64,000 nt of DNA from Vitrella brassicaformis CCMP3155 (taxonomy: Eukaryota > Protista > Chromerida). The notes below the pieces were generated by a model. That model was not told the origin of the DNA, searched no databases, and saw only the letters and a list, made by a program, of their open reading frames with translations. Shown in pieces: positions 6,380-59,352 of this stretch (position 1 is the stretch's first letter; each line of letters opens with the position of its first letter). The position numbers and the translations under genes are program-made. The stretch lies in assembly GCA_001179505.1 (NCBI GenBank), contig CDMY01001000.1, forward strand, positions 1 to 64,000, read 5' to 3'.

Positions 6380-7464
6380 ATGATCGCCATTGGGCTGTTC
6401 ACAACGGAGAGGCAAGCATCAGGCAGCAAAGGGCCACTGGTGAGCACACTATCACAGATCTTCCGGAAAAACGAATGCAAAAGATGAGATGATGAATCCC
6501 TCGCTCTGTGTGTGTTTGTTGTCTGCAGAGGATGGCACCAGGTGGCCGCAGGCTGGTCGGCCTCACTGTGTGGGGCGACGGGAAGGTCTACGAGTCCCTC
6601 GACAGGCCGGGGGAGCTGTCGTTCGACGTCACCGGTGCAGGCCCCGACGGGCGGCCGATGGAGGTGCTGCTGGGCGATGATGACAAAGGGGTCCGCTTCT
6701 TCGACTTGAGCACCGACCCGCCCAAGCTGCTGCCCATCGGAGAGTGGCCTCGAAACCGGTGAGAAGCAAACTCTGTCACTCACACCATCGCTGTGGATGG
6801 CCTCTGTGTGTGTTTGTCGGGGCCGGCAATGAGCGGGTCGTCGGCAAGACGCGTCTGGGCGACGGCTTCGTGTACGAGGACCCTTCCGCCCTGGCGGGTC
6901 AGTTCTACACCAAGGAGGGCGGCCAGCGGCGGTACTTCGACGACCTGCTGCCGCCTGGACGGCTGCCGGGACAGCCCCTCGTGGACCAAACGTGAGAGCC
7001 GACACCGTCACAACAACCATTGTGCGTGAAGATGCTGCTCTGACTCTCTCTCTGTCTGTGTGTTGATCAGTGTGGGAGTGGCCAATGGCGGCGGCGCCAC
7101 ACTGCGTCAGCGGCAGGAGGGCTCCTCATTGTCACAGCAGCAGACCGCCAACAGCAGCAGTGTTGGCCGTCGGACTGGCACATTGCCATCTGGTGCGCAG
7201 TATGAGGTGGTGCAGGAGGGCACCGGCAGAGTGCCCACACCCAACGACCGCGTCAAGTTCGACGACATCGAATGGGTGGATGGATTCAACGGCCGGGACA
7301 AATTCGTCGATTACCGTGGGCGGGTGGATCGTGTGTCTGATCTGTTTTTTGCCTGGGAGGGTGACGCGGTGCTGTCGATGCGCGAGGGGGAGACGAGGCA
7401 AATCACACTGCCACCCGGATATATCGCCCGCTACATTCAGCTGCGTTTGATCAGCATAGAGTAG
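6380..7464 (+). CDS. Family gene A: two N-modules + degenerate FKBP-like domain
   Basis: Exons ~6380-6439, 6529-6758, 6821-6991 and 7071-7464. The last exon reads LPSGAQYEVVQEGTGRVPTPNDRVKF...AVLSMREGETRQITLP...QLRLISIE*, which follows the FKBP pattern (YxVxxEGxG..P...V....MxxGExRxxxxP...L..E). The exon 3 acceptor reads GG, not AG. Confidence 0.75.
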
Positions 7465-8441
7465 GAGAGAGTCCACACACACACGGGGGGGCGGCTGTGT
7501 GTCGCCCGCACACTCATGTGTGTGGCCGGGGGCTCCTCCCTCGCTGCCTGGCTGACTAAGTGTGTGCCCCCGGTGTTGAGGGATGGAGTGAGTGTGTCAT
7601 GATGTTCATCAGCCGGTCCAGGTGCTCATGACGAACATCGTTTTGTGCGACGTGCGTGTCTGAGAGGGGGGCTCTCCGACAATGGTGTTGCATGTCAGTC
7701 GCCTCTCTCCCCCTCACTGTCCGTCTGTCTGTCTGTCTGGCTGTCTGCCATGAGTGAGGGAGTGAGCGAGTGTCCTCTGCGCGGGCTGATTCATCGGTCG
7801 GCCGGTCGGCCGCTCACGACCACACAGCTTCTGTGTGCCTGTGCTGGTGTGTGGTGTGTGAGGTCTGCTTGTGTGTGTCAATTGCAGCTGTGTGTGGTGG
7901 TGTGTTGGGAGGGCAGGGGGGGTTCTCATCACGTCAGTGTCTGCCTGGCTTTATTCTACCTGCAGTGTGGATGCTTTGCAGATGGATGGGGTGGTCGGTC
8001 GGTCGCTGAATGGCGGCGACACTCATGTGGGCTCCGTTGTGTGTCTCTGCTGCATCATGGGACATTTTCTGTCAGCCGTTGATGACTCTGTGCCCGTCGA
8101 GACGATTTTTCTCTCACCGTGTGCCATTGCGAGCTCCACACCTGCGGGCTCTTTTTTGCAGCTCCATCTCATTGAACAGAGCGAAGTCTGTTTGTGTGGT
8201 GTCTGTCCGTCTGCGACACAATCACGCTTCCAGCTGAAGTTTGATCATCCGCTCGGTCACTGCTGCGCAATGAGACCAGACGAACGGAAACTGTCAATCG
8301 CAGCGCTCACTGCCTAGCACACGAGGGCATCAGTCGGAAAACTGCCCACCTCCCCTGTCTCCCCTCTCTCTCCCCACCCCCCTGCACACACAAATCGGCG
8401 CTATGCACGCACCCACACATGAGCACCACTCATGGATGGAG

Positions 8442-11400
8442 TCATGTGTAGAGAATGGCCTCGTGGCCGGCGTCTCGTGCGGCCGTGGGCATGATGTTGT
8501 CTGCTCGTGAGATAGCGAGCAGCACTGCGGCAAAGGTGAGGGCGTCGGAGGACCAGTAGGGGAAACCCTGGGTACCTGCATGCATCGGGAGACATGGAGC
8601 GATGAATGGATCGATGTGTGTGGGGTTTAGGCAGAGTCACATACCTTCGCCGTTGAAGCCGCCGAATTCTGTGGGTGTGGTGATGTTGAAATGAGGCTGG
8701 GACACCATCACCTCATACTCATGCCTATCACACATAAACACACACACCCATGGGCAAACGCACATGCGTCTTCATGTTTGTATGTTACTTGGGAATGATG
8801 CCCGAGACGGCCAGTGTGGACCCCCATAGGAACCGGAGAATGTGCGTCGTGTTGACGTCATACTGGCCGAGTAAAGACACACACACAGGAGCGCACATCT
8901 GTCTCTTGTGTTGCGTGTTGTGTGGGATGTGGTGTGTGGTGCATACGATGGTTCCGTTCGGGGCCATGTAGAAGTTTGTCGGGTAGAAGAAGGGCACAGT
9001 CTGACCACACACACACACAGCGAGGCATCAGACACACTGACAGGTACGTGTACACACGCCCATACTACATGTGTGTGGCTGGGGCTTACTGTAATGCCCT
9101 TCATTGATCCCGAGAAGAATGCGTTGCCGGTTGGGAAGGCCCCAGAGAAAGTGTACCGCCGCAGCCATCCACACGACTCGCCCACAATACTCACCACCTT
9201 CGCTGGCGTATCTGCTCCAATTGATACGTACACATTGTGATGCGCGTCTCTCTGTTGTGTGCTGACTATATCACCTGATCGCCATTTCAGTGGTCCGAAC
9301 TTGCCGGTCGCCTCCTTCCCTTCCCCTGGTGCTGCAGTGGGATATGTCCAGATCTACACGCACGAAGCATCAACCGACCTGTATGTATGCAGGAATGCGC
9401 CCTTCGTGTGTGTGGGTGTCTAGGTACGTTTAGCAGCGTGTTGATGGCCTGTGCGGTGCTGAAAATGCGGTCCTCGCACTTGGGCCGCGGACGGCCGTAC
9501 ACATCCCGATCGCCGTTGCCCAAGAAGTCATCCTGCGCCCATCCATGTGCGTATGATCTGGTGTCTCCCTCTGGTGGTGTGAGTCTGTCGTAGGTACCCA
9601 GTATGCCCAGTGCTTCTCGGGTTTGGGCATGAAGGGGTTCGGATTGTTGCCTACAGGCAGCCATGCAGCCATGCAGCCATGCAGCCATGCAGCCAGCCAT
9701 CCATCGGTATCAGTGTGTGTCGCTAACCGTCTGGAATGGGCTCTCTGGTGACCTGGTCCAGCAGCCACTGTGTCGCCTTGGTGCGGTACACGTGGCCCAA
9801 TGCACGCTGATCGCACACAGATGGACACAGAGAGAGAGACGTGGCTGGCATCTCCGCGTGTGCAGCTCTGTCGGCACCTGTGTGTGTTTTATGAAATCTG
9901 GCAGTGTCTGTGTGCGGCCGTTGTGCAGCGAGGGGTCGGTGTACCGGTCCAGCTTGGCCACAATGCGCGAAGACATCCTGACGCCGACGCGAATGGCCAC
10001 AAATGCGGATGCCCACACACACACACACACACACACACAGATGTGTGTGTGTGTACCATAGGAAGTTGTATGCCGATGGGTAGTAGAGGAGAGCGATGTC
10101 TCGCCGAGCGAACGCGCGGCCTGAAAGAGGGACACACAGATGTTTCTTCTCCCTTACAGATGTTTTTTCTCCTTCNNNNNNNNNNNNNNNNNNNNNNNNN
10201 NNNNNNNNNNNNNNNNNNNNNNNNNNNNNNNNNNNNNNNNNNNNNNNNNNNNNNNNNNNNNNNNNNNNNNNNNNNNNNNNNNNNNNNNNNNNNNNNNNNN
10301 NNNNNNNNNNNNNNNNNNNNNNNNNNNNNNNNNNNNNNNNNNNNNNNNNNNNNNNNNNNNNNNNNNNNNNNNNNNNNNNNNNNNNNNNNNNNNNNNNNNN
10401 NNNNNNNNNNNNNNNNNNNNNNNNNNNNNNNNNNNNNNNNNNNNNNNNNNNNNNNNNNNNNNNNNNNNNNNNNNNCCCGTGTGTGCGCGTGATACCACTT
10501 GACACAGCCCACTCGACAAGCGAAGACGTGTTGCGATACAAACGCACCAGGGAGTCTGTACAAGAAGACAGACACTCGTATGTTTCTGTGTGGCCACCCA
10601 TCAGACGTGCTCATCGATTTACATACCGTAGGTGTGTGAATCGATCCCCTCCAGCAGGTGTGGCAGGTCGAGGACGGCCCCCGTCACACCCATCAACACG
10701 TTCGCACACACAGTCAGATCAACGTTGTTGACCTGCATTGCGTTGACACAAACACAGACACATGATTGCGTGTTGATATCTTCCCCTCCCTCTATCTCCT
10801 TGACTCTGAAAGGCATGTCGACGCCCAGTGGCCCTGTGCGGCGTGTCTCAGTCAGATTGGACACCTACATACCCAAATGAACATGGACAGACACATGCGT
10901 GTGAATGGATGAATGGATAGATGGATGGATGGATGAGTGAACATACCCATGTGGTGGCGATCGCGAGGTTGTGGTCCTTATGGTGATGCCACAGGAACTC
11001 CTTCAGCCAGAAGTAGGACCGGGCGTCGATCGTGTTCTGGGTGAGGGAGAGGGAGGACACACACGGACAGATCGAATGCGTGTGCGTATGTGTGCATACG
11101 TGGTCAGGGATTTTGGCTGAAGGTCTGTATGAGTATAGCAGCAGGTTGTTGACGAAGGAGGACAGCTTGTTGTTGTGGGAAGACCTGGACGGACAAAGAT
11201 AGAGAGACACGAGCGCGTGTCCATTGATGGGTGTATGGATGCACAGGTCTGTCCATAGCTTCGCTCGCACCATTGTTGGTATTGCTGTTTCATCATGCCC
11301 CTGTCAGCCGCCTCTTTCAGAAGACCACCTGCACACACACACACCCCGACAGAGACACACGCATATGTCACCAGCTGCCTCTCTGTGTGTATGAACACGT

Positions 11401-12527: not shown

Positions 12528-12604
12528 CGCCGTGTCAAGGAGGAGCCGGCAGATCACCGCAAGACAGAGAGAGAACGAAGCGGGCGCCGGCAATCGTCAA
12601 AGCA

Positions 12605-14691: not shown

Positions 14692-15328
14692 CTACTCTAT
14701 GCTGACCAACCGCAGCTGAACGTAGGGGGAATAAGATCCGGCTGGCTCTATGATTTGCCTCGTCTCCCCCTCCCGCATCGACAGAACCGCCTCACGCCAC
14801 CAATCACGCTCATCAGACACACGAGTCACCACCCCATGGAAATCGTAGCTTTTGTCCCGGCCGTTGAATCCATCACTCCAACCGATCTCGTCGTGCTTGA
14901 TGCGGTCGTTGAGTGTCGGCACTCTGCCGGTGCCCTCCGTGACGATGCGATACCGGGCGCCAGACGGGAGGCGCACGTAGCCGTCAGGAATGTTGTCGCC
15001 ATTGCTGGCCGCCGCCCCGTCGCCTCCCGCCGCTGGTGCTGCTGCCGCTGCCGCTGCCGCTGCCGCTGCTGGCCCGCTGTGCTGGTCTTCTTGACGGCGG
15101 CGCTTCGAGCCGACAGATGACCTGACACACAAGAGGGCAGCCATGCAACTTTTACTTGATTGGCGTGAGGATAACCCACTTGTCGTCGATGCAGTGGATG
15201 ATGCGGTTGTGTAACGATTTCTTGATGGCCACGCGGCGGCCATTGACCTCGAACTCATAGCCGCCGTTGCCATCCTCATACACGAAATGGCCACCAACTT
15301 CAAACAATCCGACAAGGCGGTCGCTCAT
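14692..15328 (-). CDS. Family gene B: N-module + KRRR linker + poly-Ala + degenerate FKBP-like domain
   Basis: MSDRLVGLFEVGGHFVYEDGNGGYEFEVNGRRVAIKK...IDD(K), phase-2 intron, then SSVGSKRRRQEDQH...LPSGARYRIVTEGTGRVPTLNDRIKH...LSMREGETRQII...QLRLVSIE*. Confidence 0.8.
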
Positions 15329-17313: not shown

Positions 17314-17350
<37 letters not shown>

Positions 17351-24011: not shown

Positions 24012-25214
24012 TTACTCTATCCCCAACACCTCCATCTCAACGTATTCTGTGGAGGGGGGTTTGGAGCCTGCGCCGTCCCGAAGTATAATTGCTCGCCTCA
24101 CCTCCCCAACGCGCATCTCCGGCAGAAGCTTTTCTGCTTCTTCGTACCCGGTGTCGTGTTGTGCCCAGGTCACATTATCATACTGAGATATCAGATCGCC
24201 CACTTTCACTGGCCGCCAAGCAGCATTCACTTTAGCTTTTGGCCTAGTTTCGTCACCGGGGAAGCCCCGCCGCCATTCCGTAAACCTGTAGCGGATGACA
24301 TTGTTCTGCGTTGCAGCCGCCCCAGTGCCGGGCTTGACCACTTGGTACAGCAGCTTCAACGAGGGAGACCAGATGAATGTCCTGTTGACAAGTTCGTCGG
24401 CCGGTCGACGTGTCGCATCCGCACATCCGTCCAACCTGAAAGAAAACAAGAAACAAACTTGACGGCAATCAAGCAGCCACGACGGCTGCATGCATGACAT
24501 TGTATTCACTCTCACATTTTGTCCCACGTCGTGTTGGCATACACATCGCCAAGAAGTTGGACCTCGTCAAAATGCTCCTCGAGAATGGGCCGCCACTGGC
24601 CGTCGACTTCCATTATGTAGCCTCCCTGACCATCAAGTTCCTCACCATCAAGGTGGACGCAACGACCGTCGAGGACACCCACAGCCTTCCCCGCAGGCTT
24701 CAGCTGACCATCACTGACACGAGAAACACAGCGAAGGTGCGGTTGCGCGAGCATCTTGAGGTTGTTACCTGACTTCCGGCACACCCCGTGTGAATTTGAC
24801 GTCGGCAAATCTTTTGATGTCTTTCCAGCAGCTCGACCGGATCGGCCGGCGAAGGCCCTCCGCCTCTATCTGATGGCAATCATCGCTGTCGAAGTATACA
24901 AAGCAACCTTGGAGCAACCCAATCGCCTTGTCAGTCGCTCGCATCGTCAGAGCCACCCCTGGAACCACACACAGCCACGGACAGCAGTCGAGTTCCCCCT
25001 CCTTTATGTACACACTCAGAGTCCCATGGCATTGCTCACTTGACGCTGGGTTCCTTCTTGCCCTCAGCAGTCTGTTCACACGGCTCGGGCGAGAGATCTT
25101 GGACAGATCTGCTACAAGGAAGCCACCAGATGAACGGAGAGGGGCGAGATGACGCCCTTCTCCCATATGTCCCAGGGCCGCAGCAACGATAGCAAGCCAC
25201 AAAGCCATCATCAT
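24012..25214 (-). CDS. Family gene C: signal peptide + two N-modules + more divergent FKBP-like domain
   Basis: MMMALWLAIVAAALG...KAIGLLQGCFVYFD...FADV, phase-2 intron, KAVGVLDGRCVHLD...DGQGGYIMEVDGQWRPI...LGDV, phase-2 intron, LLYQVVKPGTGAAATQNNVIRY...EMRVGEVRRAII...VEMEVLGIE*. Confidence 0.75.
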
Positions 25215-32786: not shown

Positions 32787-33568
32787 ATGGTGCTTGTGGG
32801 TGCTGGGGTGGGCGGCAAAATAAGAGCGCAGGAAACGCGAGGACTGGACGAGACCAACCCAAAAATCGACCCGAAGGGAATTTACCATGCGCCCCGCAAA
32901 GATCCGCCGTTCATGTTCTCAAGAATTGAGAAAGGTCAACCTGCCCAAACCCTGTCACCCAAACCCTACTTGAATCGTTCCCCCTACCTCTCTCTTCACA
33001 CAGACGAGATGGATACATACGAGTGGGATCCCAAGCACAATCGTATGACCATCTGCTTCGACAACCACGAGTGAGTCACCTGCACACCAAACACGCGTGT
33101 CTGTTGCATGATCCTGATCTGGCTTCCCTCGTGTGTGTCAGGCCGTCTGCGGGCACCAAGCGACGACGTCCACACGACCAGCAGCAGAACGACGACACGC
33201 CGCCACCACCATCACCACAACCAACAGCAACAGCACGTGAGAGAGCCACGGCCACCAACGGCAGCAGCGTCTGTGAGGGCTTCCCTCGGCACGACAATGG
33301 CCTATATCATCAAGTGTGGCGAGTGAGCAGGGGGCGCCGACCAGTCGGCAGTCAGCTCGTGAGGTACGACATGGAATGCTGGACTGACGGCTTCGATGGC
33401 CTCTACAAGACAGTCGACAACAAGGGGGTGCTGCGCCCTTTGTCTGAGTGTCCTGAGTGGGTTCGGGCGACTCTCACTGAAATGCGTGTGTGTGAGGTCC
33501 GGCGGGTCATCATGCCGGGCACACACGGGGTGCGCTTCTACCAGATCAATCTGCTTGAGATTCGGTGA
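32787..33568 (+). CDS. Family gene D: unrelated N-terminus + KRRR linker + degenerate FKBP-like domain; possible extra exon 33641-33788
   Basis: ...TICFDNHE, phase-2 intron, PSAGTKRRRPHDQQQ...LYHQVWRVSRGRRPVGSQLVRYDMECWTDGFDG...EWVRATLTEMRVCEVRRVIMP...QINLLEIR. Confidence 0.7.
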
Positions 33569-35686: not shown

Positions 35687-36560
35687 CTCTCCTACTCTAT
35701 GCTGATCAAACGCAGCTGACGGAAGCGGGCAGGATATCTGGGTGGCGCTGTGATTCGCCAAATCTCGCCCTCTCGCATCGACAGCAACGGCTCACGCAAC
35801 CAGTCAATCAGATCAGACACACGACGCACCTCCCCACGATTCTCGAAGGCTTTGCGCTGGCCGTCGAATCCATAACGCCATACGATCAGGTCGATCTTGA
35901 CGCGGTCGTTGAGTGTCGGCACTCTGCCGGCGCCCTCCTGGATCACCTCATATCGGTAGCCAGTCGATGGCAGTGTGCCGGTCCGACGGCCAACACTGCT
36001 GCTGTTGGCGGTCTGCTGCTGTGACAATGAGGAGCCCTCCTGCCGCTGACGCAGTGTGGCGCCGCCCCCATTGAGCACACCCACACTGAGGAATGAGCAG
36101 ACACACACACAGCAGAGGGCATTTAAATGTCTGCCTGTGCCGCCAGTCAGTGCAGCCATTGTGTGTGAGATACCTGCTGGCCAGCTGCCGTAGGTCCAGA
36201 TTGACATCTTCAAACAGCCTGATCAGCCCATAGTCGGTCTTGCGGATAAACCGCCGCTCTCTGTCGCCGGCGAGAGGGCCGCCCTCCCCCTGCTGCACCA
36301 AAATGTACAGCCCACTGCCGTCGGTGAAGACATTGCGGCCCTCAAACAGACCCACCACACGGCCCGACAGACTGCTCACAGACGATGACATCCTCACAGA
36401 TCCAACGCGATGCTGCACACACCACACACACACACACACACACAGAAGAGAGGGCACACAGAGGTGAACTTGTTGATCAGATCTCGGTCCTACTATGGTC
36501 GCCTGTGCTGTCCTGACTCACCTGGCCTCGCGAGAAGGTTTGCCTCCCTGTCCTTGGGGC
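34790..36560 (-). repeat. ~1.8 kb duplicated block (gene E + introns + ~0.9 kb 3' flank); inverted copy at ~50530-52370
   Basis: Shared non-coding strings include gccaggtgagtcaggacagcacaggc, gagtgcatcccacaaagaca, caacgaaacgcact and gctcgtatgactgg. Confidence 0.85.
35692..36391 (-). CDS. Family gene E: N-module + degenerate FKBP-like domain
   Basis: MSSSVSSLSGRVVGLFEGRNVFTDGSGLYILV...LAS(S), phase-2 intron, ...YRYEVIQEGAGRVPTLNDRVKI...LLSMREGEIWRITAP...QLRLISIE*. Confidence 0.8.
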
Positions 36561-37993: not shown

Positions 37994-38796
37994 CGAGAGA
38001 AGGATGACTGGTGGTGGGTGCTGTATGAGTTCGATTGGTGGTCTGTGTGTGGTTTGTCTGTGCATTGCATTGTTGGGTGGTGGGTGTGTTTCTGTGACTG
38101 CATCATTCTGTAGGACGTAGGCGTAGGTAGGTAGGTTGTGTGTGTGTCGCTGTCTGTCTGTCTGTCATCTCTCTAGGACACGGGACGTACGCATGTAGTT
38201 GTGTGTTGTGCGATGTAATGTACAAGATCGATCCGATCGATCATGTGTGTCATTTTATCAGTCAGTTGTGCCTGCTTTGCTCGTCGTGTGTGAGATATGT
38301 GGTGGGTGCCTTTGGTTGTGGTGTATGCCTGCACTCGGTGCAGGTAGCTCCGTACGATCGCTGACGGCTGCATGCCCTCATGTATGGCACCAACTGTGGA
38401 CCCGGAACGGTACTCGTGATTCTCGTGATTTGTCTTTGGTGCCTGATGGGTTTGCTTGAACAAACAAATGGTGAGCGCCAAGTGAGAAAGCAATGAGTTC
38501 AATCCTACCCATCTAGGGTGCTCCCTGAAACCGCTGCTGCTGCCGGCAGGAATACAGCAATCTTTGACGATCTGGCGCTTTTGAGGACGCCAGAAGCTTT
38601 CTGGAGGCCAAGAGATGACGACAGTGAGAGGGGTTCATGACCATTGATGCCGCAGAACTCATCTGTGTGGAGTAGGTGAGCGAGTGAGTGAGTCAGATCA
38701 GACGCAGCACAGCAAATCTCCGATGTGATCTGTGATCTGTGATCTGTGGTCTGCAGGTCTCAGTTCTGTGTTCGTACGAGGCCGCCTTACAGCCTG

Positions 38797-39630
38797 ATGC
38801 AGCAGGGTGGCTGGCGGCAGCCCAGGCCGCCTGACAGCGATGGCAGAGTGCCGTCGTCATCAGGCTATTCAGCAGAGGTTAGCACAACAGGCACCATGCA
38901 TCGTAGTGTATCACTTTCTGCTGTGTACGTGCGTGTCGTCATGCAGGAGCCTGATGTTGGCCGGAGGCCAGTGGGGCTGCTCTACAGCCATTACGTCTAT
39001 GCGGATGGCCACGGCGGGTACGCTGTGGAGGTCGGGCATAAGCTGCGGCCTCTCGAGCCCTCTGCTGTCAACCAGATCATCATGTTCGCTGACGTGCACA
39101 GGTCAGTGTGTGTGTGTGGTCGGGTGAGTGGGCCGAGCTCCGACCGTTCATGCGCCACTCACTGCTTTGAAATCTGTTGCTGCAGGACAGCCGACCCGCT
39201 CTCCTCTCAGGAGCCACAGCAACAGCAGGCACCCTTGCAGTCGGCTGTCACGCCCATGACAGCTGGTGGTGCCATTGGCAGCAATGGCGGCGGCGCCGCA
39301 CTTCGTCAGCGGCAGGAGAGCTCGTCAGCAGCCAGCAGCAACGGCGATGGCTTCGTCCGGCTTCCCTCCGGCGCCCGCCATCGAGTGGTGCAGGAGGGCA
39401 CCGGCAGAGTGCCCACAGCCAACAACCGCGTCAAGTACGACGAGATCGGGTGGTTTGATGCATTCGACGGCCAGGTCAAATACATCGATGAACGTGGGCG
39501 GGTGGGTCGTGTGTCTAATCTGCCTGACTGGTTGCGTGAGGCGATGCTGTCGATGCGGGAAGGAGAGACGAGGCAGATCATAGGGCGAGCCGGGTATTAC
39601 CATCAGCTGCGTTTGGTCAGCATAGAGTAG
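38797..39630 (+). CDS. Family gene F: N-module + Gln-rich linker + degenerate FKBP-like domain
   Basis: RRPVGLLYSHYVYADGHGGYAVEV...FADVH(R), phase-2 intron, ...LPSGARHRVVQEGTGRVPTANNRVKY...MLSMREGETRQII...QLRLVSIE*. Confidence 0.8.
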   Translation: MQQGGWRQPRPPDSDGRVPSSSGYSAEVSTTGTMHRSVSLSAVYVRVVMQEPDVGRRPVGLLYSHYVYADGHGGYAVEVGHKLRPLEPSAVNQIIMFADVHRSVCVCGRVSGPSSDRSCATHCFEICCCRTADPLSSQEPQQQQAPLQSAVTPMTAGGAIGSNGGGAALRQRQESSSAASSNGDGFVRLPSGARHRVVQEGTGRVPTANNRVKYDEIGWFDAFDGQVKYIDERGRVGRVSNLPDWLREAMLSMREGETRQIIGRAGYYHQLRLVSIE

Positions 39631-42600
39631 GAGAGAGTCCACACACACAGAGGGGGGCGGCTGTGTGCGTCGCCCATTCATGTGTGTGGCCGGGGGCTCC
39701 TCCCTCGTTGTGCCTCGGCTTTGAGCGAAGGAGTGAGTGTGTCGTCTGTCTGTCGGCCACCCACACAGTCATGTGGCGGTTTCTGTCTGCCGTGTGTGTG
39801 TTTTTCGTTTCCATTCGACGGGGTGGTGTGAGAGAGCGACAGAGAGTTTCGGCTGCGTCTGTGGGTCGTCACTGTGTTGAGGGAAGGAGGGAGTGCACTG
39901 TGGTTTCTGTGATTGATTCAGCATCGTTGTCGGGGTGGATTTCTATCATGGTGTTGATGTGTGCGCGTCACTTCTTTTCCCCTCACTGTCTGAAAGCCTC
40001 TCTGGCTGTCTGTCTGCCATGAGTGGATGGGCGAGGGTGTCGACGGGCTGTTCATCGGTCGGACACTCACAGCCTCTCTCTCTCTCTCTTGCCTCCGTCT
40101 GAGTGTCTGTGTGTGGGTGCATGCCTCCCAATGTCTCCGCTTCTGACTGCAAGCGTTTTGTGTGATTTTTTAGCAGTCCATGAGTCCATCGTGTTTTGTG
40201 TTCGTCGGTCTTGAGCGTCCAGTATTGATTCTGCTGGACAAGCGAATGCAGTGGATTGGTAGTAGTTATTTCTTCTAAAGTCTACCTACGGCACACACTT
40301 CTCTCTGGTCCGGCCGGATGAACACTCTCACGCTCTCACGGACTCGCTCGCTCACTCGCTCACTCACTCACTCACGAAACTTGATGGTTAGTTGGTCAGA
40401 TGGATACACCCACCACACCACATGGCCACCCTCACACACACATGAGTACATGGAGACACACGCGCAGACGGACACACGAATGAAGGGGCCTGTCTGTCTG
40501 TCTGTCTTGACTGCACGCTGCAGCCGTCTGCCTTCCTCTCTCCTTGTGTCTCTCACCTCCCCCTCTCAGTAAGTCAGTCTCTCGCTGGGTCGGTCGCTCT
40601 TTCGATTTCTCTGTCTGCGGTTTCCATTCCACACGCAGCCCTTCCCTTCCCCCCCACACACATACACACACCCATACACACATGATCAACCGACACGGCA
40701 GCAGGGCGGGGCTCTCTGCCCCTCCTGTCACACACGCACGCACCGCACTTCACCGCACTGCTGCAGCTCATGACACTCATGTGATGTGATGTGATGTTTT
40801 GTGATGTGTATGTGATGTGATATGATGTGATGTGCAGATGGACTTGTGTCACTCACTCACGTGCAGGTGTTAGTGTCATGGAATGAATGAATGGATCGAT
40901 CCAACGAACGGCTATGAGCGATAGGATTCAGCAACCCACCCATCTACCCCCATCCACGCACACACCACCCATCCCCATTCACCAATCGTATGTTGAGTTG
41001 AGAAAGGTTGCTGGAGGGAAGAGAAAGAAGGACACGTGACGAAAAAGGGTACACTTACGTACGGCTGGTTGTTGGTTGATTGATAACCCGACACACGCAA
41101 ACCTACCTCTCTCTGTCTCCCTCTCTCTCCGTCGCTCTCTCCCTCCCTCCCGCACACAGACGCCCGCGCACGGATTGGTACCTACAGACACGTCTCTCTG
41201 CGTGTGGTCCCCCTGCCGTGCCCTCCTCTGCTCTGGGTGTATGTATGTGAGTGTACACACTCTTCTCTCGGGCCCCTCGTTCTCCCCTCCCTCCCTCTCT
41301 CTGTCCGTGTGGCCGTGTGGCTGTCTGTCTGCCTGGCGAAGAAGAGGCGAGAATGGGGTACACTACTGACTGGTGCGTGTGAATGAGGATGTGTGTGTAC
41401 GTGTGTGTACGTGTGTGTACGTGTGTGGGAGGGCGACTCAGCTCGCTCCGCTTCCAAAAATACCGAGCAGTGACTAGCCGACCCATTCCAACACACAGGC
41501 ATAGCACATGTGGGGGGTGATGGACACACACACACACACACACACGCACTCAGACGGACAGAGGAAGCACACAGACTCTCCCTCCCCCTCCTCTCTCTCT
41601 CTGTGGCTCTCTCTCTCTCCTCTCCCCTCGGTAAGTTGTGTGTGTGTGTATATTGTGTGTATATTGTGTGTATATTGTGGGTATCTGTATGAAGCGACGC
41701 AATATACACACACACACACACACACATACAGACAGATCGACATACACAGAGATACGCAATGCTCTAGCTCTAGCTCTTGCTGGGCGAAAAAGAGCTGCTC
41801 AGGAAAACACAGCCGAAAAAGGTCCGTCCGAAAAGGGCAGGCAGGCTGGCCTGCCCTGTCACTCGACCCGCACACATCCATCCATCTGTCCATCTTTCTG
41901 TCCATCTGGCTATGGGTAAAGCGAATACCTAAGGGAAGGAGGAAGGAAATACATACAAATACGAAACGTGAAAAGAAGGTGCGCCAATACATAATGCTCT
42001 TTGTTGGCTCCTTGGGCCCTTGATTCGCATGCAGTGCACGACACACATACATACACACNNNNNNNNNNNNNNNNNNNNNNNNNNNNNNNNNNNNNNNNNN
42101 NNNNNNNNNNNNNNNNNNNNNNNNNNNNNNNNNNNNNNNNNNNNNNNNNNNNNNNNNNNNNNNNNNNNNNNNNNNNNNNNNNNNNNNNNNNNNNNNNNNN
42201 NNNNNNNNNNNNNNNNNNNNNNNNNNNNNNNNNNNNNNNNNNNNNNNNNNNNNNNNNNNNNNNNNNNNNNNNNNNNNNNNNNNNNNNNNNNNNNNNNNNN
42301 NNNNNNNNNNNNNNNNNNNNNNNNNNNNNNNNNNNNNNNNNNNNNNNNNNNNNNNNNNGGGAGGGTAGGGGGGGAGAGGGTAGACGAGGGAAGCAGCCAG
42401 GCAGGTATACAGGAAAACAATGACTAAGCAACACCCGGATAGATATATTGCTTGAAACGCGCAGAGAGACACGAACGAACGAACACAGATGGATGGCTGT
42501 GGGGTTAGCACTGCGCTTCATACTTACATCGCCTGACTGACTGATTGATACAAACAGATGAAGAGAGCAAAGGAGCAAGAGAAAAGGCGCAAGAGAGCGG

Positions 42601-50441: not shown

Positions 50442-50669
50442 GAGAAACGTTGATGCAGCGGCAAAGAAGGGGGACTGCACCACAGATCTGTGACCACGCT
50501 GCCTCACAGACGACGAAACGCACACTTTCTGGCGTGCAAGCTCAGCTCGAAGCAAACAGAGGTGAAGGGAGCCAGGTGAGTCAGGACAGCACAGGCAACC
50601 ATAGAATGATCGAGATCTGATCAATATGTGTGTGTCTGTGGCGTGCAGCATCGCGTTGGATCTGTGAGG

Positions 50670-51360
50670 ATGTCATTGTCTGTGAGCAGTCTGTCGGGCC
50701 GTGTGGTGGGTCTGTTTGAGGGCCGCAATGTCTTCACCGATGGCAGTGGGCTGTACATCCTGGTGCAGCAGGGGGACGGCGGCCCTCTCGGCGGCGACAG
50801 AGAGCGGCGGTTTATCCGCAAGACCGACTATGGGCTGATCAGGCTGTTTGACGATGTCAACCTGGACCTACGGCAGCTGGCCAGCAGGTATCTCACACAC
50901 CGTGATGGATGCACTGAATGGCGGCATAGGCAGACATTTGTGTGCCCTCTGCTGTGTGTGTGTCCTTTCGTTGATCAGTGTGGGTGTGGCCAATGGCGGC
51001 GGCGCCACACTGCGTCAGCGGCAGGAGGGATCGTCGTCAGCCCCCAACAGCAACGGCGATGGCTTCAGTGTGAGCCCGTTAGGTAATCGGTATCGCATCG
51101 TCACGGAGGGCACCGGGAGAGTGCCGACACTCAACGACCGCGTCAAGGTTGACGACATCTGGTGGCGGGATGCATTCGACAGCCAGAACAATGCCTTCTT
51201 CGATCGCCGTGGGAAGGTGTGGCTTGCGTCTGATTGGGTTGGGTGCCTCCGTGAGGCGATGCTGTCGATGAGGGAGGGGGAGACGAGGCAAGTCATCATA
51301 CCAGCCGACGACAGATATTATCCCCGCTACGTTCAGCTGCGTTTGGTCAGCATAGAGTAG
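50670..51360 (+). CDS. Family gene G: N-module (near-identical to E) + degenerate FKBP-like domain
   Basis: MSLSVSSLSGRVVGLFEGRNVFTDGSGLYILV..., phase-2 intron, ...YRIVTEGTGRVPTLNDRVKV...MLSMREGETRQVIIP...QLRLVSIE*. Confidence 0.8.
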
Positions 51361-54709: not shown

Positions 54710-55262
54710 AGGAATGAGTGAATGGATGGATGTGGAGGCGCATGGGTGCCGTGCGCAGATGTCGTGTAGATAGAGAGATAGACAGACGGCTGATTGCTTG
54801 GTTGGTTGATTGATGTAACTGTATAGGCAGCTGCTGCGACAGACACACTTGATTACGTCTGACTGGTCGGCCTACATCGATATGGATGTCAATATGCAGG
54901 CAGACACGATTAGTTAAAGTCGATGGATGGTCGATAAAGAGCACACGCCATTCGTGTCACTCAGGCAGGCAGGCAGGCCGGCAGGGAGGGAGGGAGGAAA
55001 GAGATAGGGACATCATCGCTCCCACACACACACACACACATACCATCGCGTCGAATAAAAGGGCGCCGCGCGCAGTCAACCCCCCCCCTCTCCCTACAGC
55101 ACACAGGCACCACGAGTGGCAAAATCAGACAGACAATGCATTCCCTCCTGTGCTCAAACCCGAGGCACTCAGTCAGCCAGCCAACGAGGGAAGAGCCCCC
55201 AGCCACACACATGAGTGTGTGACACACAGCCGCCCCCCATGTGTGTGTGTGTGCACTCTCTC

Positions 55263-56937
55263 CTACTCTATGCTGATCAATCGCAGCTGAGCGTAGCGGT
55301 CAATATAGTCGTCTGGCAGTTTGATTTGTCTCACTTCCCCCACACGCATTGACAGCACCGCCTCACGCAGCCACCCACCCATATCAGACACACGATAGAC
55401 CCACCCACGGCGATCGTAGACTCTGCGCTGGCCGTCGAATGCATCACACCACGCAATCCAGTCGTACCTGACGCTGTCGTTGAGTGTCGGCACTCTGCCG
55501 CTGCCCTCCGTGACGATGCGATACCAATCACCAAACGGAATTGAAGTGAAGCCATCACTGTCGCTGCAAAGTGGATGATAAGGACGAATGGCGACACCGG
55601 TCCTCCTAGTTCTGTCCATCGGCGTACCTGGTCTGCTGTGCGCCATGTGGAGTGTCGGTCTTGACAACGCCGTACATGGCCGCGTTGATGTCGAAGGCCG
55701 CCTGCTCTCGGGCGGTGTCCATCTGCAGCGGCACGTTGGCCTCGGCGGGCGAGGCGCCGAGTCGCTGCCGGCGGTGGTGGTCGACGATGCGGCTAATGTG
55801 GTCGGGCTGCACCACATCCACCGGCCCCGGCCACCTAAAGACACACACCACACTCAAACAGCCGCCCGAGTGCATCTCAGCAATGTCCATTGCTCACATG
55901 TCGAATCGATTTATCAGCTCCTGGTTCATGGTATCGACAGTCGACTGAGTAGTGGATATCACCTGACCGCACGCGTCGACAGACCGGATGTGGTCACCGC
56001 CACTCAGAGGCAGCAAGAAGGGCTCGACGGCCTGGGGCAAAGAAATAGCAACGAGATGAGCAACACGCAGCATCGACCCCCTCCCCCTCCTCCCCCTCCC
56101 TCTCTCTCTGTCTGTGCCAATCTCGTCACCTGTATCTCTTTGTTGAGGTGGTCACGTCGTGTGTTGGCGGCCCGCAGCTGTCCCTCCAGCCGGGCCTTTT
56201 CAGCGGCGAACGCCTTCATGATGCCTTCCAGCCTCTTGACGGTGTCGCCCATCTCGGCGGGGATACCCGTGGTGGGCAGCCGCAGGTCGGTGCCAGCACC
56301 GCCACTGGAAGTGGCCTCCGCCGGCGTGGTCTTGTCGAGAGGCGACATCATCAGCTTGACCCAAAAGTCATGAGGACCTGCAACACACAAGCAGCCGGCC
56401 GAAGAAACGAAGGGGGCGGAATGATGATATGATGAAAAGTGTGTCCCCCTCTCGTTGCCTTAACTTACCGGTTTGGTTCCGCTTGGCCGCGTCATCGATC
56501 AGATGTTTGACCGACGCCGCCTTGCCCGAAGTGCGCATCGTCTCGGCGTCGAGGATGGCCTTGTGGATGGCCCTGAAGGCCTCCGAGTCCATGTTGAGGA
56601 ACACCCGCTGCTTGTCGTCCCTGACCAGTCGGCCGTCCCAGCAGCCCGAGCACAACGCCGCCAGCAGAGTGCCCTCCACCCCCTCCCCTTGAGTCAACAG
56701 CTTCCGCTTCACTCGCCACTCGCTGCCGCCCACATTGAGCAGCAGTACGTCATCGGGCGACGCTGCTGAGGGGTCCGATGCGCCGTGCTTGATTCTCTCT
56801 TGCTGGGCGTCCTCGTCGGCTTGGCGGATCTGTGCGTGCAGCTGGCTGATGGCGTCGCAGATGGCCGTCACAGGCACATGCAGCTCATTGAGAATCGCAT
56901 GGGCGCTGAACTGGCGAGCGGCCAACTCGGCCTCCAT
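55263..56937 (-). CDS. Family gene H: BTB + coiled coil + second BTB-like + degenerate FKBP-like domain, 5 exons
   Basis: All four introns keep frame: BTB...QT(G)|PHDFWVK...KEIQ|AVEPFLL...VISTTQSTV...NRFD(M)|WPGP...HISRIVDHHRRQRL...AFDINAAMYGV...QT(S)|DSDGF...YRIVTEGSGRVPTLND...QLRLISIE*. Confidence 0.8.
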
Positions 56938-57315
56938 CGTTTGTCGCGGCGCAACACATCTGTCACACAAGTGCCTGACAACCACAAACACCGATGAGCA
57001 GGTTTTAGTGTTGTTCCATTGTCGTCCTTGCACACCTGATGCCCAACACAAAGGCGATGCCGAAGTCCTTTTTTCTGACTGCGAGCTTAGCCGCGCTGAA
57101 GCGGATCCGATTGCACCAATTGCTGAGGGCCTGAGAGTGGATGAGGGGCTCGCAGCGGGCGGCCCGACACACTTGCTGTGCCGACGCGTCTTTCGATATC
57201 GATTCACTCATTCATTCGTTCACTGTCACGTACATGCATCGCCAGCACGGACAAAGTGTGTGTGTATACGAGTCCATCCATCCATCCATCCATCCATTGG
57301 GTCGCTGATTCCGTG

Positions 57316-57339
<24 letters not shown>

Positions 57340-57351
<12 letters not shown>

Positions 57352-57630
57352 GTGTGTGTCTGATTGGCCGCCGCACCTCAGTGTTCCCTCCCACCACAAA
57401 CATGGACGGAGGCAGAGTGCCCGACAGAACCGAACACACTGCTCACGACCATGATGCAGAGATGGGAGGGCACACTGAGGTGCAGCTTTGAATCAAAGCA
57501 GAGATCACATAGATGCCCCTCACTGTCAGCTCAAAAGCGCCCCTGCGATGGCTAAGCGGATCAGTGTGTCAGTGAGTATACACACAAACGAAGACGGCTC
57601 GTCGTGTCAATGCCGTCTGTCTGTCTGCCG
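57340..57630. repeat. ~290-bp direct repeat, second copy at ~60810-61105
   Basis: Shared ctgattggccgccgca(c/t)ctcagtgttccctccc..ggacggagg..cgacagaaccgaacacactgctcacg..gaggtgcagctttgaa..gagtatacacaca..cgaagacggc. Confidence 0.85.
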
Positions 57631-58081
57631 GATCGCTGGCCGCACAACAGATAGACGAGTTCAATAAAAGTCAGCACACACACACGGCAGATGACATAGA
57701 CACCCCACGTCGATCTTGCCGCCACACGCACACACACAATGGACAAAAGAATAAAAACCACCGCAATCACCACACACACGACAGGCCGACGGATAGCACA
57801 CGCACACACACACGACAATCCCACTCGGCCATCCAACACACGCACTCACGCAGTCAAAGCTCTCTGTCGCTCTCACACACAATCGCGTCGAATGAAAATG
57901 AAACACACACACGGCAGACAGAAACCGCCACATGAGTGTCTGGGTGGCCGACAGACAGACAGACAGCACACTCACTCCTTCGCTCAAAGCCGAGGCACAA
58001 CGAGGGAGGAGCCCCCGGCCGCACACATGAGTGTGACAGACACACACAGCCGCCCCCACGTGTGTGTGTGTGGACTCTCTC

Positions 58082-59352
58082 CTACTCTATGCTGATCAAA
58101 CGCAGCTGAATGTAGCGGGGACCGGCTATGATCTGCCTCGTCTCCCCCTCCCGCATCGACAGCACCGCCTCACGCAGCAACTCGTACCCAAAATCAGACA
58201 CACGACGCACCCACCCACGGACATCGTACGCTTTGTCCCGGCCGTCGAATGCATCACGCCATGCAATGGTGTCGACCTTGACACGGTCGTTGGCCGTTGG
58301 CACTCTGCCGGTGCCGGGCGTGATGATGCGATACCGAGCACCTAACGGGGTCACAGTGAAGCCTTCACTGTCACTGCAAAGGAAGGGACCAAGCATGACA
58401 GACGGCGAGGTGGCTTGTGTCCCTCCTCCTTTGAACCGACCTGGCCCGCTGCTGCTGCGTGCCGCTCGGCTGCGGTCCGGCGGTGCCGGCAGCAGAAGTC
58501 CCCACCGGCGCACCGCCACCACTGGCAACACTGACACACACGCCAACACGTGAGCCAGGGGATCAACCAGTGTGGCAGTGACGGGCAGTCGCTTTGATGC
58601 ACACCTGTGGCTGTTGGGTGTCCGCTCGGCCGTCGGCCGCTGGGGAATCCCACGCAGCCTTTATGCAGCCACACAGCACACGAGAGAGAGGGGGGGAGAT
58701 GGCATATCGGTGCGTTTGATTGATTACCGGGGGTCTTGTTGGTTGCCTCCTGCTGTGCCGTAGATGGGAATGAGGCTGTCGACCGTCACGCCCGCCTTGC
58801 ACACCGGACACGACGTCTGGTCCTCTTCGAGCAGCCACTTGCCAAGACACGCCCAGCAATACTACACGGCACACAACACACCCCACACTCACACAACTCA
58901 TGTGGTGCCTCGTGGTCTCACTCACCATGTGGCCGCATCGCGTGACGACCGGCTCCGTTGCGCCCTCCTTGCAAATGCCACACGCGAAGCGACCTGGCGC
59001 CTCATGTGTGGCGCCGCACTGAGGGCAGCCTGCTGCTGGTGGTGGTGGTTCGTTGTGGTCTTCTCGACGGCGGCGCTTGGAACCGACAGATGACCTGACA
59101 CACAGGGGGGCACACCAAGTCAAGATGAACACACATGTGTGTGCTGTGCTGTGCTGTGTGAGTCCCCTACGTGTCTGTGTCGGCGGAGCCGAACTTGATG
59201 TGGTCGTGGAATGACCGGTCGATGGCCACACGCTGCCCCTGCACATCCATCTCGTAGCCGCCACGGCCGTCCTCATACACACGACACTCAAACACTCCGA
59301 CGCTCGACGGCGATGGTGCGGTGGGATCCGCAGACGACCAAGACGAGCCCAT
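58082..59352 (-). CDS. Family gene I: N-module + KRRR linker + RNF5/RMA1-type C3HC4 RING + degenerate FKBP-like domain, 6 exons
   Basis: SVGVFECRVYEDGRGGYEMDV...|SSVGSKRRR...FACGICKEGATEPVVTRCGHM|YCWACLGKWL...CPVCKAGVTVDSLIPIYG...DP(R)|LRGIPQRP...|...|DSEGF...YRIITPGTGRVPTAND...QLRLISIE*. The joins keep frame. Additional 5' exons are possible. Confidence 0.85.

What the first reader, a model, noticed from the sequence alone, without database searches (positions are those of the whole stretch)
6380..59352. Candidate new system: nine dispersed modular genes with a degenerate FKBP-like domain fused to interchangeable N-terminal modules, including E3-ligase parts
Seen: nine genes in 53 kb on both strands, not in tandem (A 6380-7464+, B 14692-15328-, C 24012-25214-, D 32787-33568+, E 35692-36391-, F 38797-39630+, G 50670-51360+, H 55263-56937-, I 58082-59352-). 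They share a C-terminal domain YxVxxEGxGRVPTxNDRVK...LSMREGExRxI...QLRLxSIE. Upstream parts differ: an unnamed module x1-2, KRRR, a signal peptide, a RING, or BTB-CC-BTB. Known: this is the FKBP pattern, but by my manual alignment the Tyr26-equivalent is D/E/L/T/W, the Phe99-equivalent is non-aromatic and the 80s flap is largely deleted, so PPIase activity is unlikely. RING and BTB are ubiquitin-ligase components. Inference: a diversifying repertoire of binding domains, some routing targets to ubiquitination, analogous to expanded F-box/MATH-BTB defence families. I know of no description of this, but could not search.
Basis: partly seen in the sequence, partly recalled or inferred. Interest (0 to 1): 0.85.

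Follow-up and report, generated by a model that had tools for sequence, protein, structure and literature searches.

The report
Fast-evolving FKBP-like module gene family
The alga Vitrella brassicaformis carries at least 150 copies of a stripped-down, probably enzyme-dead FKBP domain whose former ligand pocket changes faster than neutral DNA; each copy sits on a last exon spliced behind different gene fronts (some are ubiquitin-ligase parts), as expected of a home-grown set of target-recognition modules.

Summary
The window holds exactly nine complete copies of a ~100-aa C-terminal domain at the stated gene ends. The genome is Vitrella brassicaformis CCMP3155 and holds at least 151 matches, nearly all without stops.

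The domain has an FKBP fold (model pLDDT 91; best structural match Legionella Mip, TM 0.75). It fails Pfam's FKBP_C cut-off, lacks the 80s flap, and has variable residues where FKBP12 has Y26, F46, V55, I56, W59, Y82 and F99.

New here:
- Those pocket positions evolve at omega 3-7 (p<=1.6e-8). The rest of the domain is at 0.5, the opposite sheet face at 0.3, and the ~46-aa N-terminal module at 0.15.
- All nine genes enter the exon that encodes the domain through a phase-2 intron.
- Spliced RNA contigs support the BTB fusion (gene H) and the RING fusion (gene I).

All 19 family proteins looked up are from Vitrella. The nearest outside relative is a near-canonical Chromera FKBP.

Not confirmed: the second BTB of H, the "module" of A, and any binding, ubiquitination or defence role. 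Gene D looks degenerate.

The two flagged gaps lie between genes. This scan already reported the same family on neighbouring DNA, with the same reading. I found no paper describing it.

The parts
6380..7464 (+). Gene A. The public annotated model (263 aa) maps to 6380-6439, 6529-6759, 6835-6852, 6903-6992 and 7071-7464. The last exon carries a GGGATLRQRQ-type linker and the FKBP-like domain (7147-7461). The front parts do not match the N-module profile.
   Evidence: phase-2 intron before 7071
14692..15328 (-). Gene B (192 aa). Exon 1 (15328-15180) is the N-module. Exon 2 (15121-14692) is a KRRR linker plus the FKBP-like domain (14695-15009).
   Evidence: in frame with a single stop; phase-2 intron. 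No RNA was laid on this gene.
24012..25214 (-). Gene C (public model 327 aa). It has a hydrophobic N-terminus (likely signal peptide), two N-modules (24786-24938 and 24533-24694) and the most divergent FKBP-like domain, which has a ~20-aa loop insertion (last exon 24435-24012).
   Evidence: The signal peptide is judged by eye only.
32787..33568 (+). Gene D. The last exon (33142-33568) has a KRRR linker and an FKBP-like domain with two otherwise near-invariant glycines replaced. Only the last few residues of an N-module remain upstream, so this copy is possibly decaying. The public model starts at 33045 and splices over the stop.
   Evidence: (long branch)
35692..36391 (-). Gene E (203 aa). Exon 1 (36391-36174) is the N-module. 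Exon 2 (36085-35692) is linker plus FKBP-like domain. E is an inverted duplicate of G over ~1.76 kb at 78-80% identity.
38647..39630 (+). The N-module exon is 38947-39104. The last exon (39186-39630) is linker plus FKBP-like domain.
50670..51360 (+). Gene G (199 aa). Exon 1 (50670-50887) is the N-module. Exon 2 (50979-51360) is linker plus FKBP-like domain.
55263..56937 (-). Gene H (452 aa), five exons: 56937-56469 (BTB_2-like), 56377-56130 (coiled coil), 56031-55898 and 55834-55628 (a conserved region, the possible second BTB), and 55563-55263 (FKBP-like domain alone).
   Evidence: Spliced RNA contigs give joints 56375/56467 and 55831/55895. One RNA contig stops aligning at 55563, which is the acceptor of the last exon. 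Exon reading and frame. BTB_2 scores 14.1 bits in H and passes the cut-off in paralogs.
58082..59352 (-). Gene I (276 aa, or 353 aa if a 231-nt in-frame stretch is retained). Exons: 59352-59171 (N-module), 59094-58926 (KRRR linker and first RING half), 58861-58728 (second RING half and an RNF5-like tail), 58658-58605, and 58373-58082 (FKBP-like domain). A 5'UTR intron lies at 59487-59400.
   Evidence: Joints 59399/59488, 58861/58926 and 58657/58727 are present in the RNA runs and absent from the DNA-like run. RNA contigs end at 59092, by the acceptor. All eight C3HC4 ligands are read. The two halves match RING models at positions 1-19 and 21-40.

Best explanation
These nine genes belong to a family of at least 150 copies, seen so far only in Vitrella. 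In this family a shortened FKBP fold has stopped working as a prolyl isomerase and serves as a variable recognition module.

Shown:
- The fold is FKBP.
- The 80s flap is gone, and the hydrophobic residues that line the FK506/substrate pocket are replaced by positions that differ in almost every copy and evolve under positive selection. The scaffold and the opposite face of the sheet are conserved.
- The domain, with or without a basic KRRR or Gly/Gln-rich linker, always sits on the last coding exon and is always entered through a phase-2 intron, so it can be spliced in frame behind any front that ends in phase 2.
- The commonest front is a ~46-aa beta-rich N-module under strong purifying selection. 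Other fronts are a KCTD-type BTB with a coiled coil, an RNF5-like RING, SET, HMG box and signal-peptide forms.
- Genes H and I are transcribed and spliced as fusions.

Inferred:
- Each copy binds a different target through the remodelled pocket face.
- The constant front decides what happens to the bound target. RING and BTB fronts would send it to ubiquitination. The N-module would recruit a shared, still unknown partner.
- The driver is some evolutionary conflict or self/non-self recognition, as with F-box and MATH-BTB adaptors or TRIM5-CypA.
- The family probably grew by local DNA-level duplication from a signal-peptide-bearing algal FKBP, whose near-canonical counterpart survives in Chromera (Cvel_16534).
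For: - **Fold.** The profile of the nine domains hits Mip-type FKBPs at E 1.7e-5. The AF2 model has pLDDT 91. All top Foldseek hits are FKBPs, the best being LpMip at E 2.9e-6 and TM 0.75.
- **Pocket loss.** Entropy is 3.1-3.7 bits at the Y26, F46, F48, V55, I56, W59 and Y82 equivalents (2.7 at F99), against a mean of 1.75 elsewhere (Mann-Whitney p 7e-5). There are 88 distinct 8-residue pocket signatures among 93 domains.
- **Selection, on 43 genomic copies.** GY94 omega is 6.6-13 for nine pocket equivalents and 0.51 for the rest (LRT against omega=1, p<1e-16). The strict FK506-contact set gives 3.1-3.5 (p<=1.6e-8) and the opposite-face control 0.30. Counting gives 1.93 (binomial p 2.7e-7); random 9-site sets reach that in 0.045% of draws. 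The N-module is at omega 0.148.
- **Intactness and expression.** 146 of the 150 listed matches have no stop. Spliced RNA contigs cover H and I. Several family proteins are MMETSP transcripts.
- **Cassette.** All nine genes have a phase-2 intron before the domain exon.
- **Recurrent fusions.** BTB_2 passes Pfam's cut-off in P0058 and P0063, P0051 has an HMG box, and P0049 has a SET domain (20.3 bits, just under Pfam's 22.4 cut-off). RING-plus-domain copies with introns lie at three further loci.
- **Lineage restriction.** 19 of 19 family representatives looked up are Vitrella. The library also holds Chromera, whose best hit is one near-canonical FKBP.
Against: - No binding, ubiquitination or localisation has been shown.
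- Most members have no E3 part, and the N-module has no recognisable fold or partner.
- The omega tests use paralogs on one FastTree topology. Recombination or gene conversion between copies, alignment uncertainty in the loops (positions 89-93), and the fact that I fixed the pocket set after seeing the entropy table could all inflate the signal.
- Whether FKBP12 F36/D37 correspond to the conserved F47/D48 or to the variable 54/55 is unresolved. Both alignments were tested.
- I had no coordinates of the model, so 'pocket face' rests on alignment and strand parity, not on measured exposure.
- RNA evidence is from assembled contigs and covers only two of the nine genes.
- D looks degenerate, and A's front is unexplained.
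Confidence: 0.62

Rival explanations
1. Relaxed constraint. The copies are redundant duplicates of a dead enzyme. Their old active site drifts neutrally while the fold is kept for stability, and no new recognition function exists.
For: The pocket residues are lost and the flap is deleted. Overall domain omega is high, 0.66-0.84. D looks degenerate.
Against: Neutral drift gives omega near 1, not 3-7 with p<=1.6e-8. The scaffold and the N-module are under purifying selection (0.51, 0.30 and 0.15). 146 of the 150 listed matches keep open frames. H and I are transcribed and spliced.
Confidence: 0.12
2. The domains are still chaperones or isomerases. They would form an enlarged set of FKBP-type folding helpers with diversified client preference, for nucleus, secretory pathway or plastid, comparable to the many inactive lumenal FKBPs of plants.
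For: The FKBP fold is present. Under one alignment the conserved F47/D48 correspond to F36/D37. The nearest relatives are algal FKBPs with signal peptides. Some members have hydrophobic N-termini, and many have KRRR linkers.
Against: The flap and most pocket aromatics are missing. Only 2 of the 9 domains hit Pfam FKBP_C at all, and both are below the cut-off. Positive selection at the client face and about 150 copies in one species are unlike housekeeping chaperones.
Confidence: 0.13
3. Transposon cargo or a repeat artefact. The domain exon is carried around by a mobile element, and the fusions are accidents of insertion or of gene prediction.
For: The copies share the domain exon plus 100-250 nt of 3'UTR at 72-82% DNA identity, and they sit in dense clusters on both strands.
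Against: The shared segments vary in length: 1.76 kb for E/G and 300-560 bp for other pairs. No common termini were seen. The ten longest other ORFs have no Pfam hit, transposase or reverse transcriptase included. The fusions of H and I are confirmed by spliced RNA contigs that the DNA-like run lacks. The domain is under selection.
Confidence: 0.05
4. Nuclear chromatin adaptors. The KRRR linkers, the SET, HMG and BTB fronts and the possibly SH3/Tudor-like N-module point to a family that reads or tethers nuclear proteins (histones, or proteins of transposable elements or viruses), not a general cytoplasmic recognition system.
For: KRRR linkers occur in B, D and I. An HMG box and a SET domain occur in paralogs. 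Nuclear FKBPs (AtFKBP53, Fpr4) appear among the fold matches. The weak matches of the N-module are mostly SH3/Tudor-like barrels.
Against: The N-module fold matches are not significant (best E 0.7, Z at most 2.8). The SET hit is below Pfam's cut-off. Members with a signal peptide or a transmembrane segment exist. The nuclear-localisation reading is by eye. This rival is a special case of the main explanation and does not exclude it.
Confidence: 0.08

Closest known systems
FKBP-type peptidyl-prolyl isomerases (Pfam FKBP_C): bacterial Mip and the signal-peptide-bearing algal FKBPs, with Chromera velia Cvel_16534 as nearest outside relative
   Same: The fold is the same (TM 0.75 to LpMip). Shared motifs are GxGxxP...V, W-x-DGFD and M-R/K-x-G-E-x-R.
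   Different: The 80s flap is deleted. The Y26, F46, V55, I56, W59, Y82 and F99 equivalents are hypervariable. Every copy scores below Pfam's cut-off. There are about 150 copies in one species, fused to unrelated fronts.
Non-catalytic FKBP-like domains used for binding: AIP/AIPL1, FKBP38, the FK2 domain of FKBP51/52, FKBPL, plant FKBP42 (from my own knowledge)
   Same: An FKBP fold that has lost isomerase activity and acts as a ligand- or protein-binding module.
   Different: Those are single, conserved genes with one partner class. Here there is a large paralog family with positive selection on the pocket face and exon-cassette modularity.
TRIM5-CypA (TRIMCyp) of owl monkeys and macaques (from my own knowledge)
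   Same: An isomerase-fold domain serves as the C-terminal target-recognition part of a RING E3. Gene I has the same logic: RING, then an isomerase fold.
   Different: TRIMCyp uses cyclophilin, not FKBP. It arose by retrotransposition of an active CypA and exists as one fusion, not a family. No antiviral role is shown here.
Expanded, positively selected E3 substrate adaptors: F-box and MATH-BTB families of nematodes and plants
   Same: A small conserved adaptor part plus a variable binding domain with selection at the binding surface; lineage-specific clustered expansion.
   Different: The variable domain is an FKBP fold. The commonest constant part (the N-module) is not a known E3 adaptor. 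Only a minority of members carry BTB or RING.
RNF5/RNF185-type RING ligases, and KCTD-type BTB_2 proteins
   Same: Gene I has a complete C3HC4 RING followed by an IPxYG...QDPR tail like RNF5 (the likeness to RNF5 is from memory). H-type paralogs pass BTB_2.
   Different: I has no membrane anchor; the FKBP-like exon replaces the C-terminus. H itself is below the BTB_2 cut-off, and Cul3 binding is untested.

Membership tests
FKBP_C (PF00254) / FKBP superfamily | Five-stranded antiparallel sheet wrapped round a short helix (FKBP fold) | tested here: met
   AF2 model pLDDT 91 with the strand and helix order of FKBP. All top Foldseek PDB hits are FKBPs; the best has E 2.9e-6 and TM 0.75.
FKBP_C (PF00254) / FKBP superfamily | Sequence score above Pfam's gathering cut-off (21.1 bits) | tested here: not met
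   Only 2 of the 9 domains hit at all (15.7 and 12.1 bits); 7 have no hit. The nine-copy profile does reach solved FKBPs at E 1.7e-5.
Active FKBP isomerases (FKBP12-like) | Conserved pocket residues Y26, F36, D37, F46, V55, I56, W59, Y82, F99 | tested here: not met
   The equivalents of Y26, F46, V55, I56, W59, Y82 and F99 are among the most variable columns (2.7-3.7 bits). F36/D37 are either kept (F47/D48) or variable (54/55), depending on the alignment.
Active FKBP isomerases (FKBP12-like) | 80s flap (G83-T96 of FKBP12, with H87, I90, I91) | tested here: not met
   Only about 6 residues lie between the conserved P88 and the last strand. About 13 residues are missing relative to Mip and to the algal FKBPs.
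Active FKBP isomerases (FKBP12-like) | PPIase activity and FK506/rapamycin binding | not testable with these tools
   Needs a protease-coupled isomerase assay and drug binding with recombinant domains.
RING finger (C3HC4), gene I | Eight metal ligands with spacing C-x2-C-x(9-39)-C-x(1-3)-H-x(2-3)-C-x2-C-x(4-48)-C-x2-C | tested here: met
   Read across the RNA-supported 58926/58861 splice as C-x2-C-x11-C-x-H-x2-C-x2-C-x12-C-x2-C. The two exon halves match zf-C3HC4 positions 1-19 and 21-40, each below the cut-off on its own.
RNF5/RNF185-type membrane RING ligases, gene I | C-terminal transmembrane anchor | tested here: not met
   The RING and its tail are followed by the FKBP-like exon, with no hydrophobic C-terminus.
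BTB_2 (PF02214, KCTD/T1-type), gene H | Score above Pfam's cut-off (21.4 bits) for the first BTB | tested here: inconclusive
   H exon 1 scores 14.1 bits, E 0.063. Its paralogs score 26.2 bits (P0058), 25.5 bits (P0063) and 20.6 bits (P0155).
BTB_2 (PF02214), gene H second region | A recognisable second BTB after the coiled coil | tested here: inconclusive
   No Pfam hit. The profile of six paralogs finds no BTB in the PDB. ESM Atlas features point to BTB_2 clusters at 0.86, which counts only as a lead.
Positively selected E3 substrate-adaptor families (F-box or MATH-BTB kind) | Conserved adaptor part plus a binding domain with omega above 1 at the binding face | tested here: met
   N-module omega is 0.148. 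Pocket-face omega is 3.1-7.4, against 0.51 for the rest and 0.30 for the opposite face.
Positively selected E3 substrate-adaptor families (F-box or MATH-BTB kind) | Physical link of the adaptor part to a cullin, E2 or ligase core | not tested
   No interaction test was run. The N-module has no known fold or family.

The most novel reading that the evidence does not exclude
Vitrella has built a recognition system of its own kind. It would comprise about 150 FKBP-fold 'receptor' cassettes with individually different, positively selected binding faces, coupled through a new conserved adaptor box (the ~46-aa N-module) or directly through RING or BTB fronts to ubiquitination or another common effector. 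It would serve in conflict with viruses, bacteria or selfish elements, or in self/non-self recognition. This would be an innate-immunity-like repertoire on a scaffold never before seen in that role, in a free-living relative of the apicomplexan parasites.
Probability: 0.25. Interest if true: 0.9.

Novelty: new variant of a known kind. Interest (0 to 1): 0.75.

Why it matters
FKBPs are textbook conserved enzymes and drug receptors. Here the fold is reused as a hypervariable binding scaffold, multiplied about 150-fold in one alga and plugged behind ubiquitin-ligase and chromatin domains through one compatible intron phase.

If the reading holds, it has three consequences:
- It adds a new scaffold to the short list of natural diversified recognition domains (LRR, Ig, SPRY, MATH, F-box-associated).
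- It gives a clean eukaryotic example of exon-cassette shuffling in progress.
- It opens the question of what a coral-associated, free-living cousin of malaria parasites needs to recognise so variably.

The small, stable domains with a natural variable face could also interest protein engineers.

Tried and rejected
- **N-module identity.** No Pfam family and no PDB sequence hit. Foldseek best E is 0.7, VIA-align Z is at most 2.8, the ESM Atlas structure search gives nothing meaningful, and the Atlas features search gives no usable hit. 'SH3/Tudor-like small barrel' remains a guess.
- **Second BTB of H.** Not found by Pfam or by a profile against the PDB.
- **A's front as N-modules.** Rejected at the profile level.
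- **High-depth 'joints' at 54962-54985 and 57950-57967 in the read laying.** These are (CTGC)n and (CTGT)n simple repeats in the 3'UTRs, not a functional element.
- **Transposon proteins nearby.** The ten longest other ORFs have no Pfam hit.
- **Literature.** Four searches plus the genome paper (eLife 2015, PMC4501334, which has no mention of FKBP, BTB or RING) gave no description of this family.
- **Model coordinates.** The tools do not return them, so solvent exposure of the variable sites could not be measured.
- **Joined spliced proteins.** Exons were searched one by one, and joining was done only inside a script to count frame and stops.


Full report
**What is there**

The nine align over ~105 columns and are 27-67% identical to copy A. 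G27, W43, F47, M78, R79, E82 and I104 are invariant. A permissive HMM scan of every ORF of 20 aa or more in the window finds these nine and nothing else.

The window has four assembly gaps. The two inside the finding, 10176-10475 and 42059-42358, lie 2.4 kb or more from the nearest family exon. They affect only the A-B and F-G spacing, not any gene model. I could not lay reads over them, because the single read-laying run went to genes H and I.

**Organism and size of the family**

The genome has 72.7 Mb in 1064 contigs, and the window is the first 64 kb of a 227.6-kb contig. Exact look-ups name it Vitrella brassicaformis CCMP3155.

The nine-copy profile finds at least 151 matches in this genome. 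Of the 150 listed, 146 have no internal stop. They cluster on a few contigs.

Against 1.84 billion representative proteins the profile gives 654 hits at E<=1e-3. About 55 of the listed 150 are family-level, and all 19 that I looked up are Vitrella; several are also MMETSP transcripts. The remaining hits are bacterial multi-FKBP proteins and canonical algal FKBPs.

The nearest outside relative is Chromera velia Cvel_16534. It shares family motifs but keeps Tyr26, the FD pair and the full 80s flap. The library therefore contains Chromera, and Chromera lacks the expansion.

**Fold and loss of the enzyme pocket**

- Single copies fail Pfam FKBP_C: the best scores are 15.7 and 12.1 bits against a cut-off of 21.1, and seven copies have no hit.
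- The profile reaches solved Mip-type FKBPs at E 1.7e-5.
- The AlphaFold model has pLDDT 91.
- All top Foldseek hits are FKBPs, the best being LpMip at E 2.9e-6 and TM 0.75.

I used the HMMER alignment to Mip together with the gapless match of the family's V-K-[YF]-D-x-I-x-W-x-D-G-F-D to the algal V-x-V-H-Y-T-G-W-L-D-G-F-D. In my numbering (profile position minus 1) the FKBP12 pocket residues map as follows:

| FKBP12 residue | Family position |
|---|---|
| Y26 | 40 |
| F46 | 59 |
| F48 | 61 |
| E54 | 65 |
| V55 | 66 |
| I56 | 67 |
| W59 | 70 |
| Y82 | 93 |
| F99 | 96 |

About 13 flap residues, including H87, I90 and I91, are absent.

Among 93 non-redundant domains these positions are among the most variable (3.1-3.7 bits; F99 equivalent 2.7; E54 equivalent 2.0). 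The scaffold is nearly fixed: G16, G25, G27, P30, W43, D45, F47, M77, G80, E81, R83, L100 and I103. The nine window copies all differ in their pocket signature, and there are 88 distinct signatures among the 93 domains. Loss of isomerase activity is a reasonable inference but is not shown.

**Selection**

From 264 kb of held DNA I extracted 43 complete copies with their codons.

| Test | Result |
|---|---|
| SLAC-like parsimony count, whole domain | dN/dS 0.84 |
| Sites with excess non-synonymous change (p<0.01) | 32, 59, 66, 87, 93 (site 67 at p 0.012) |
| GY94 maximum likelihood, nine pocket equivalents | omega 6.6-13 |
| GY94, rest of the structured domain | omega 0.51 |
| Likelihood-ratio test against omega=1, pocket set | p<1e-16 under three codon-frequency models |
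| Counting, pocket set | omega 1.93, binomial p 2.7e-7 |
| Random 9-site sets that reach the pocket value | 0.045% |
| Strict FK506-contact list, both possible F36/D37 alignments | omega 3.1-3.5, p<=1.6e-8 |
| Opposite-parity positions on the same strands (control) | omega 0.30 |
| N-module, 14 copies | omega 0.148 |

Caveats: one tree was used for recombining paralogs, the loop alignment is uncertain, and the pocket set was fixed after I had seen the entropy table.

**Gene structure and expression**

Three runs (X1, X6, X7) hold contigs with GT..AG joints on the minus strand that a DNA-like run (X3) lacks. The joints are 56375/56467 and 55831/55895 in H, and 59399/59488, 58861/58926 and 58657/58727 in I.

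Reading the sequence gives these models:
- H has five exons: a BTB-like front, a coiled coil, a conserved region split over two exons, and the FKBP-like exon. The acceptor of that last exon, at 55563, is exactly where an RNA contig stops aligning.
- I has the N-module, then a KRRR linker with the first RING half, then the second RING half with an RNF5-like tail, then a short exon, then the FKBP-like exon.
- Both are in frame with one terminal stop: H is 452 aa, and I is 276 aa or 353 aa.

Public annotated proteins map onto A, C, D, F and G. B and E were modelled from splice sites. In all nine genes the exon that carries the domain is entered through a phase-2 intron.

Six genes carry a recognisable N-module: B, C (two copies), E, F, G and I. 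A's front does not match it. D keeps only its last residues and has replaced two near-invariant glycines.

**The fronts**

- **RING of I.** It has all eight C3HC4 ligands, and its halves match RING models at positions 1-19 and 21-40. Intron-bearing paralogs of this piece lie next to FKBP-like copies at three other loci, and one copy lies on a contig with no family hit. The RING fusion is therefore itself a duplicated subfamily.
- **First BTB of H.** It is sub-threshold in H (14.1 bits) but passes in the paralogs P0058 and P0063.
- **Second 'BTB' of H.** It has no sequence support and only a language-model lead.
- **Other fronts.** Other Vitrella members add a SET domain (just below Pfam's cut-off), an HMG box, signal-peptide forms with two N-modules, a form with a transmembrane segment and a Cys-rich region, and tandem arrays of 3-6 domains.
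- **N-module.** It occurs about 58 times in the genome, usually 200-500 bp upstream of a domain copy. It folds as a small beta module (pLDDT 84) with no significant match anywhere.

**How the copies spread**

Copies share the domain exon plus 100-250 nt of 3'UTR at 72-82% DNA identity. E and G share 1.76 kb. The shared lengths vary, no common termini were seen, and the ten longest other ORFs have no Pfam hit. This fits local DNA-level duplication with exon exchange and does not fit a transposon.

**Interpretation**

- **Shown:** an FKBP fold with a dismantled, positively selected pocket face; a conserved front module; a uniform phase-2 cassette design; transcribed RING and BTB fusions; restriction to Vitrella within very large libraries.
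- **Inferred:** each copy recognises a different target, and the front determines the target's fate (ubiquitination for RING or BTB members). The nearest analogues in logic are the F-box and MATH-BTB adaptor families and TRIM5-CypA. These comparisons come from my own knowledge, not from a tool.

I put 0.62 on the recognition-module reading. The lesser rivals are neutral decay of a dead enzyme, a diversified chaperone set, a nuclear-only adaptor family and transposon cargo.

**Novelty**

Four literature searches and the genome paper gave no description of this family. This scan has already reported the same family on neighbouring windows of this genome, with the same reading. My tests were run independently on this window and agree with those reports.

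Noticed in passing
window 5631-6200 (minus strand), gap 5331-5630: A tenth related gene front lies just outside the finding. It is an H-type BTB_2-like exon whose DNA is 71% identical to H's exon 1. It runs straight into assembly gap 5331-5630, and no FKBP-like exon follows on the other side, so this gene is cut by the gap.
   Followed up: partly
window 807-1697 and 3094-3992: A 0.9-kb inverted repeat at 90% identity sits near the contig start. One arm contains a two-unit telomere-like motif (TTTAGGGTTCAGGG at 946-959).
   Followed up: no
window 58374-58604 (minus strand, gene I): The 231-nt stretch between the short exon and the FKBP-like exon has GT..AG ends, is a multiple of three and has no stop. 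Spliced or retained, it gives an in-frame protein (276 or 353 aa). RNA contig depth there is similar to that of the exons.
   Followed up: partly
3' flanks of A, B, E, F, G, H, I (for example 55262-55160 and 58081-57980): The 3'UTRs begin with a conserved block: TAGGAGAGAG, a CA run, a G run, then CGGCTGTGTG...CTCATGTGTGTGGCCGGGGGCTC. (CTGT)n and (CTGC)n microsatellites follow, and these break the read contigs. It could be a shared regulatory or polyadenylation region.
   Followed up: partly
window 33565-33785 (gene D): The public gene model uses a GT that overlaps D's stop codon. It splices to a further exon that adds 48 residues with a second KKRR stretch and an acidic run.
   Followed up: no
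P0080, P0101, P0092 (Vitrella) and P0125 (Chromera Cvel_16534): The signal-peptide-type members and the Chromera relative share a hydrophobic N-terminus ending in SGF (GISGFQ in two, ISGFQ in a third, ASGFS in Chromera). This resembles the Phe-first transit-peptide junction of complex red plastids and hints that the ancestor was targeted to the plastid or the ER.
   Followed up: no
G000 contigs C666:83038, C666:95722, C449:24409, C449:70349, C447:69725, C522:30211: N-module matches occur on contigs where the FKBP-like profile reported no copy, so the N-module may also be joined to other C-terminal parts.
   Followed up: no
window 57328-57623 and 60786-61095: A 0.3-kb direct repeat at 77% identity lies upstream of gene H and again 3.4 kb further on. 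Its meaning is unknown.
   Followed up: no
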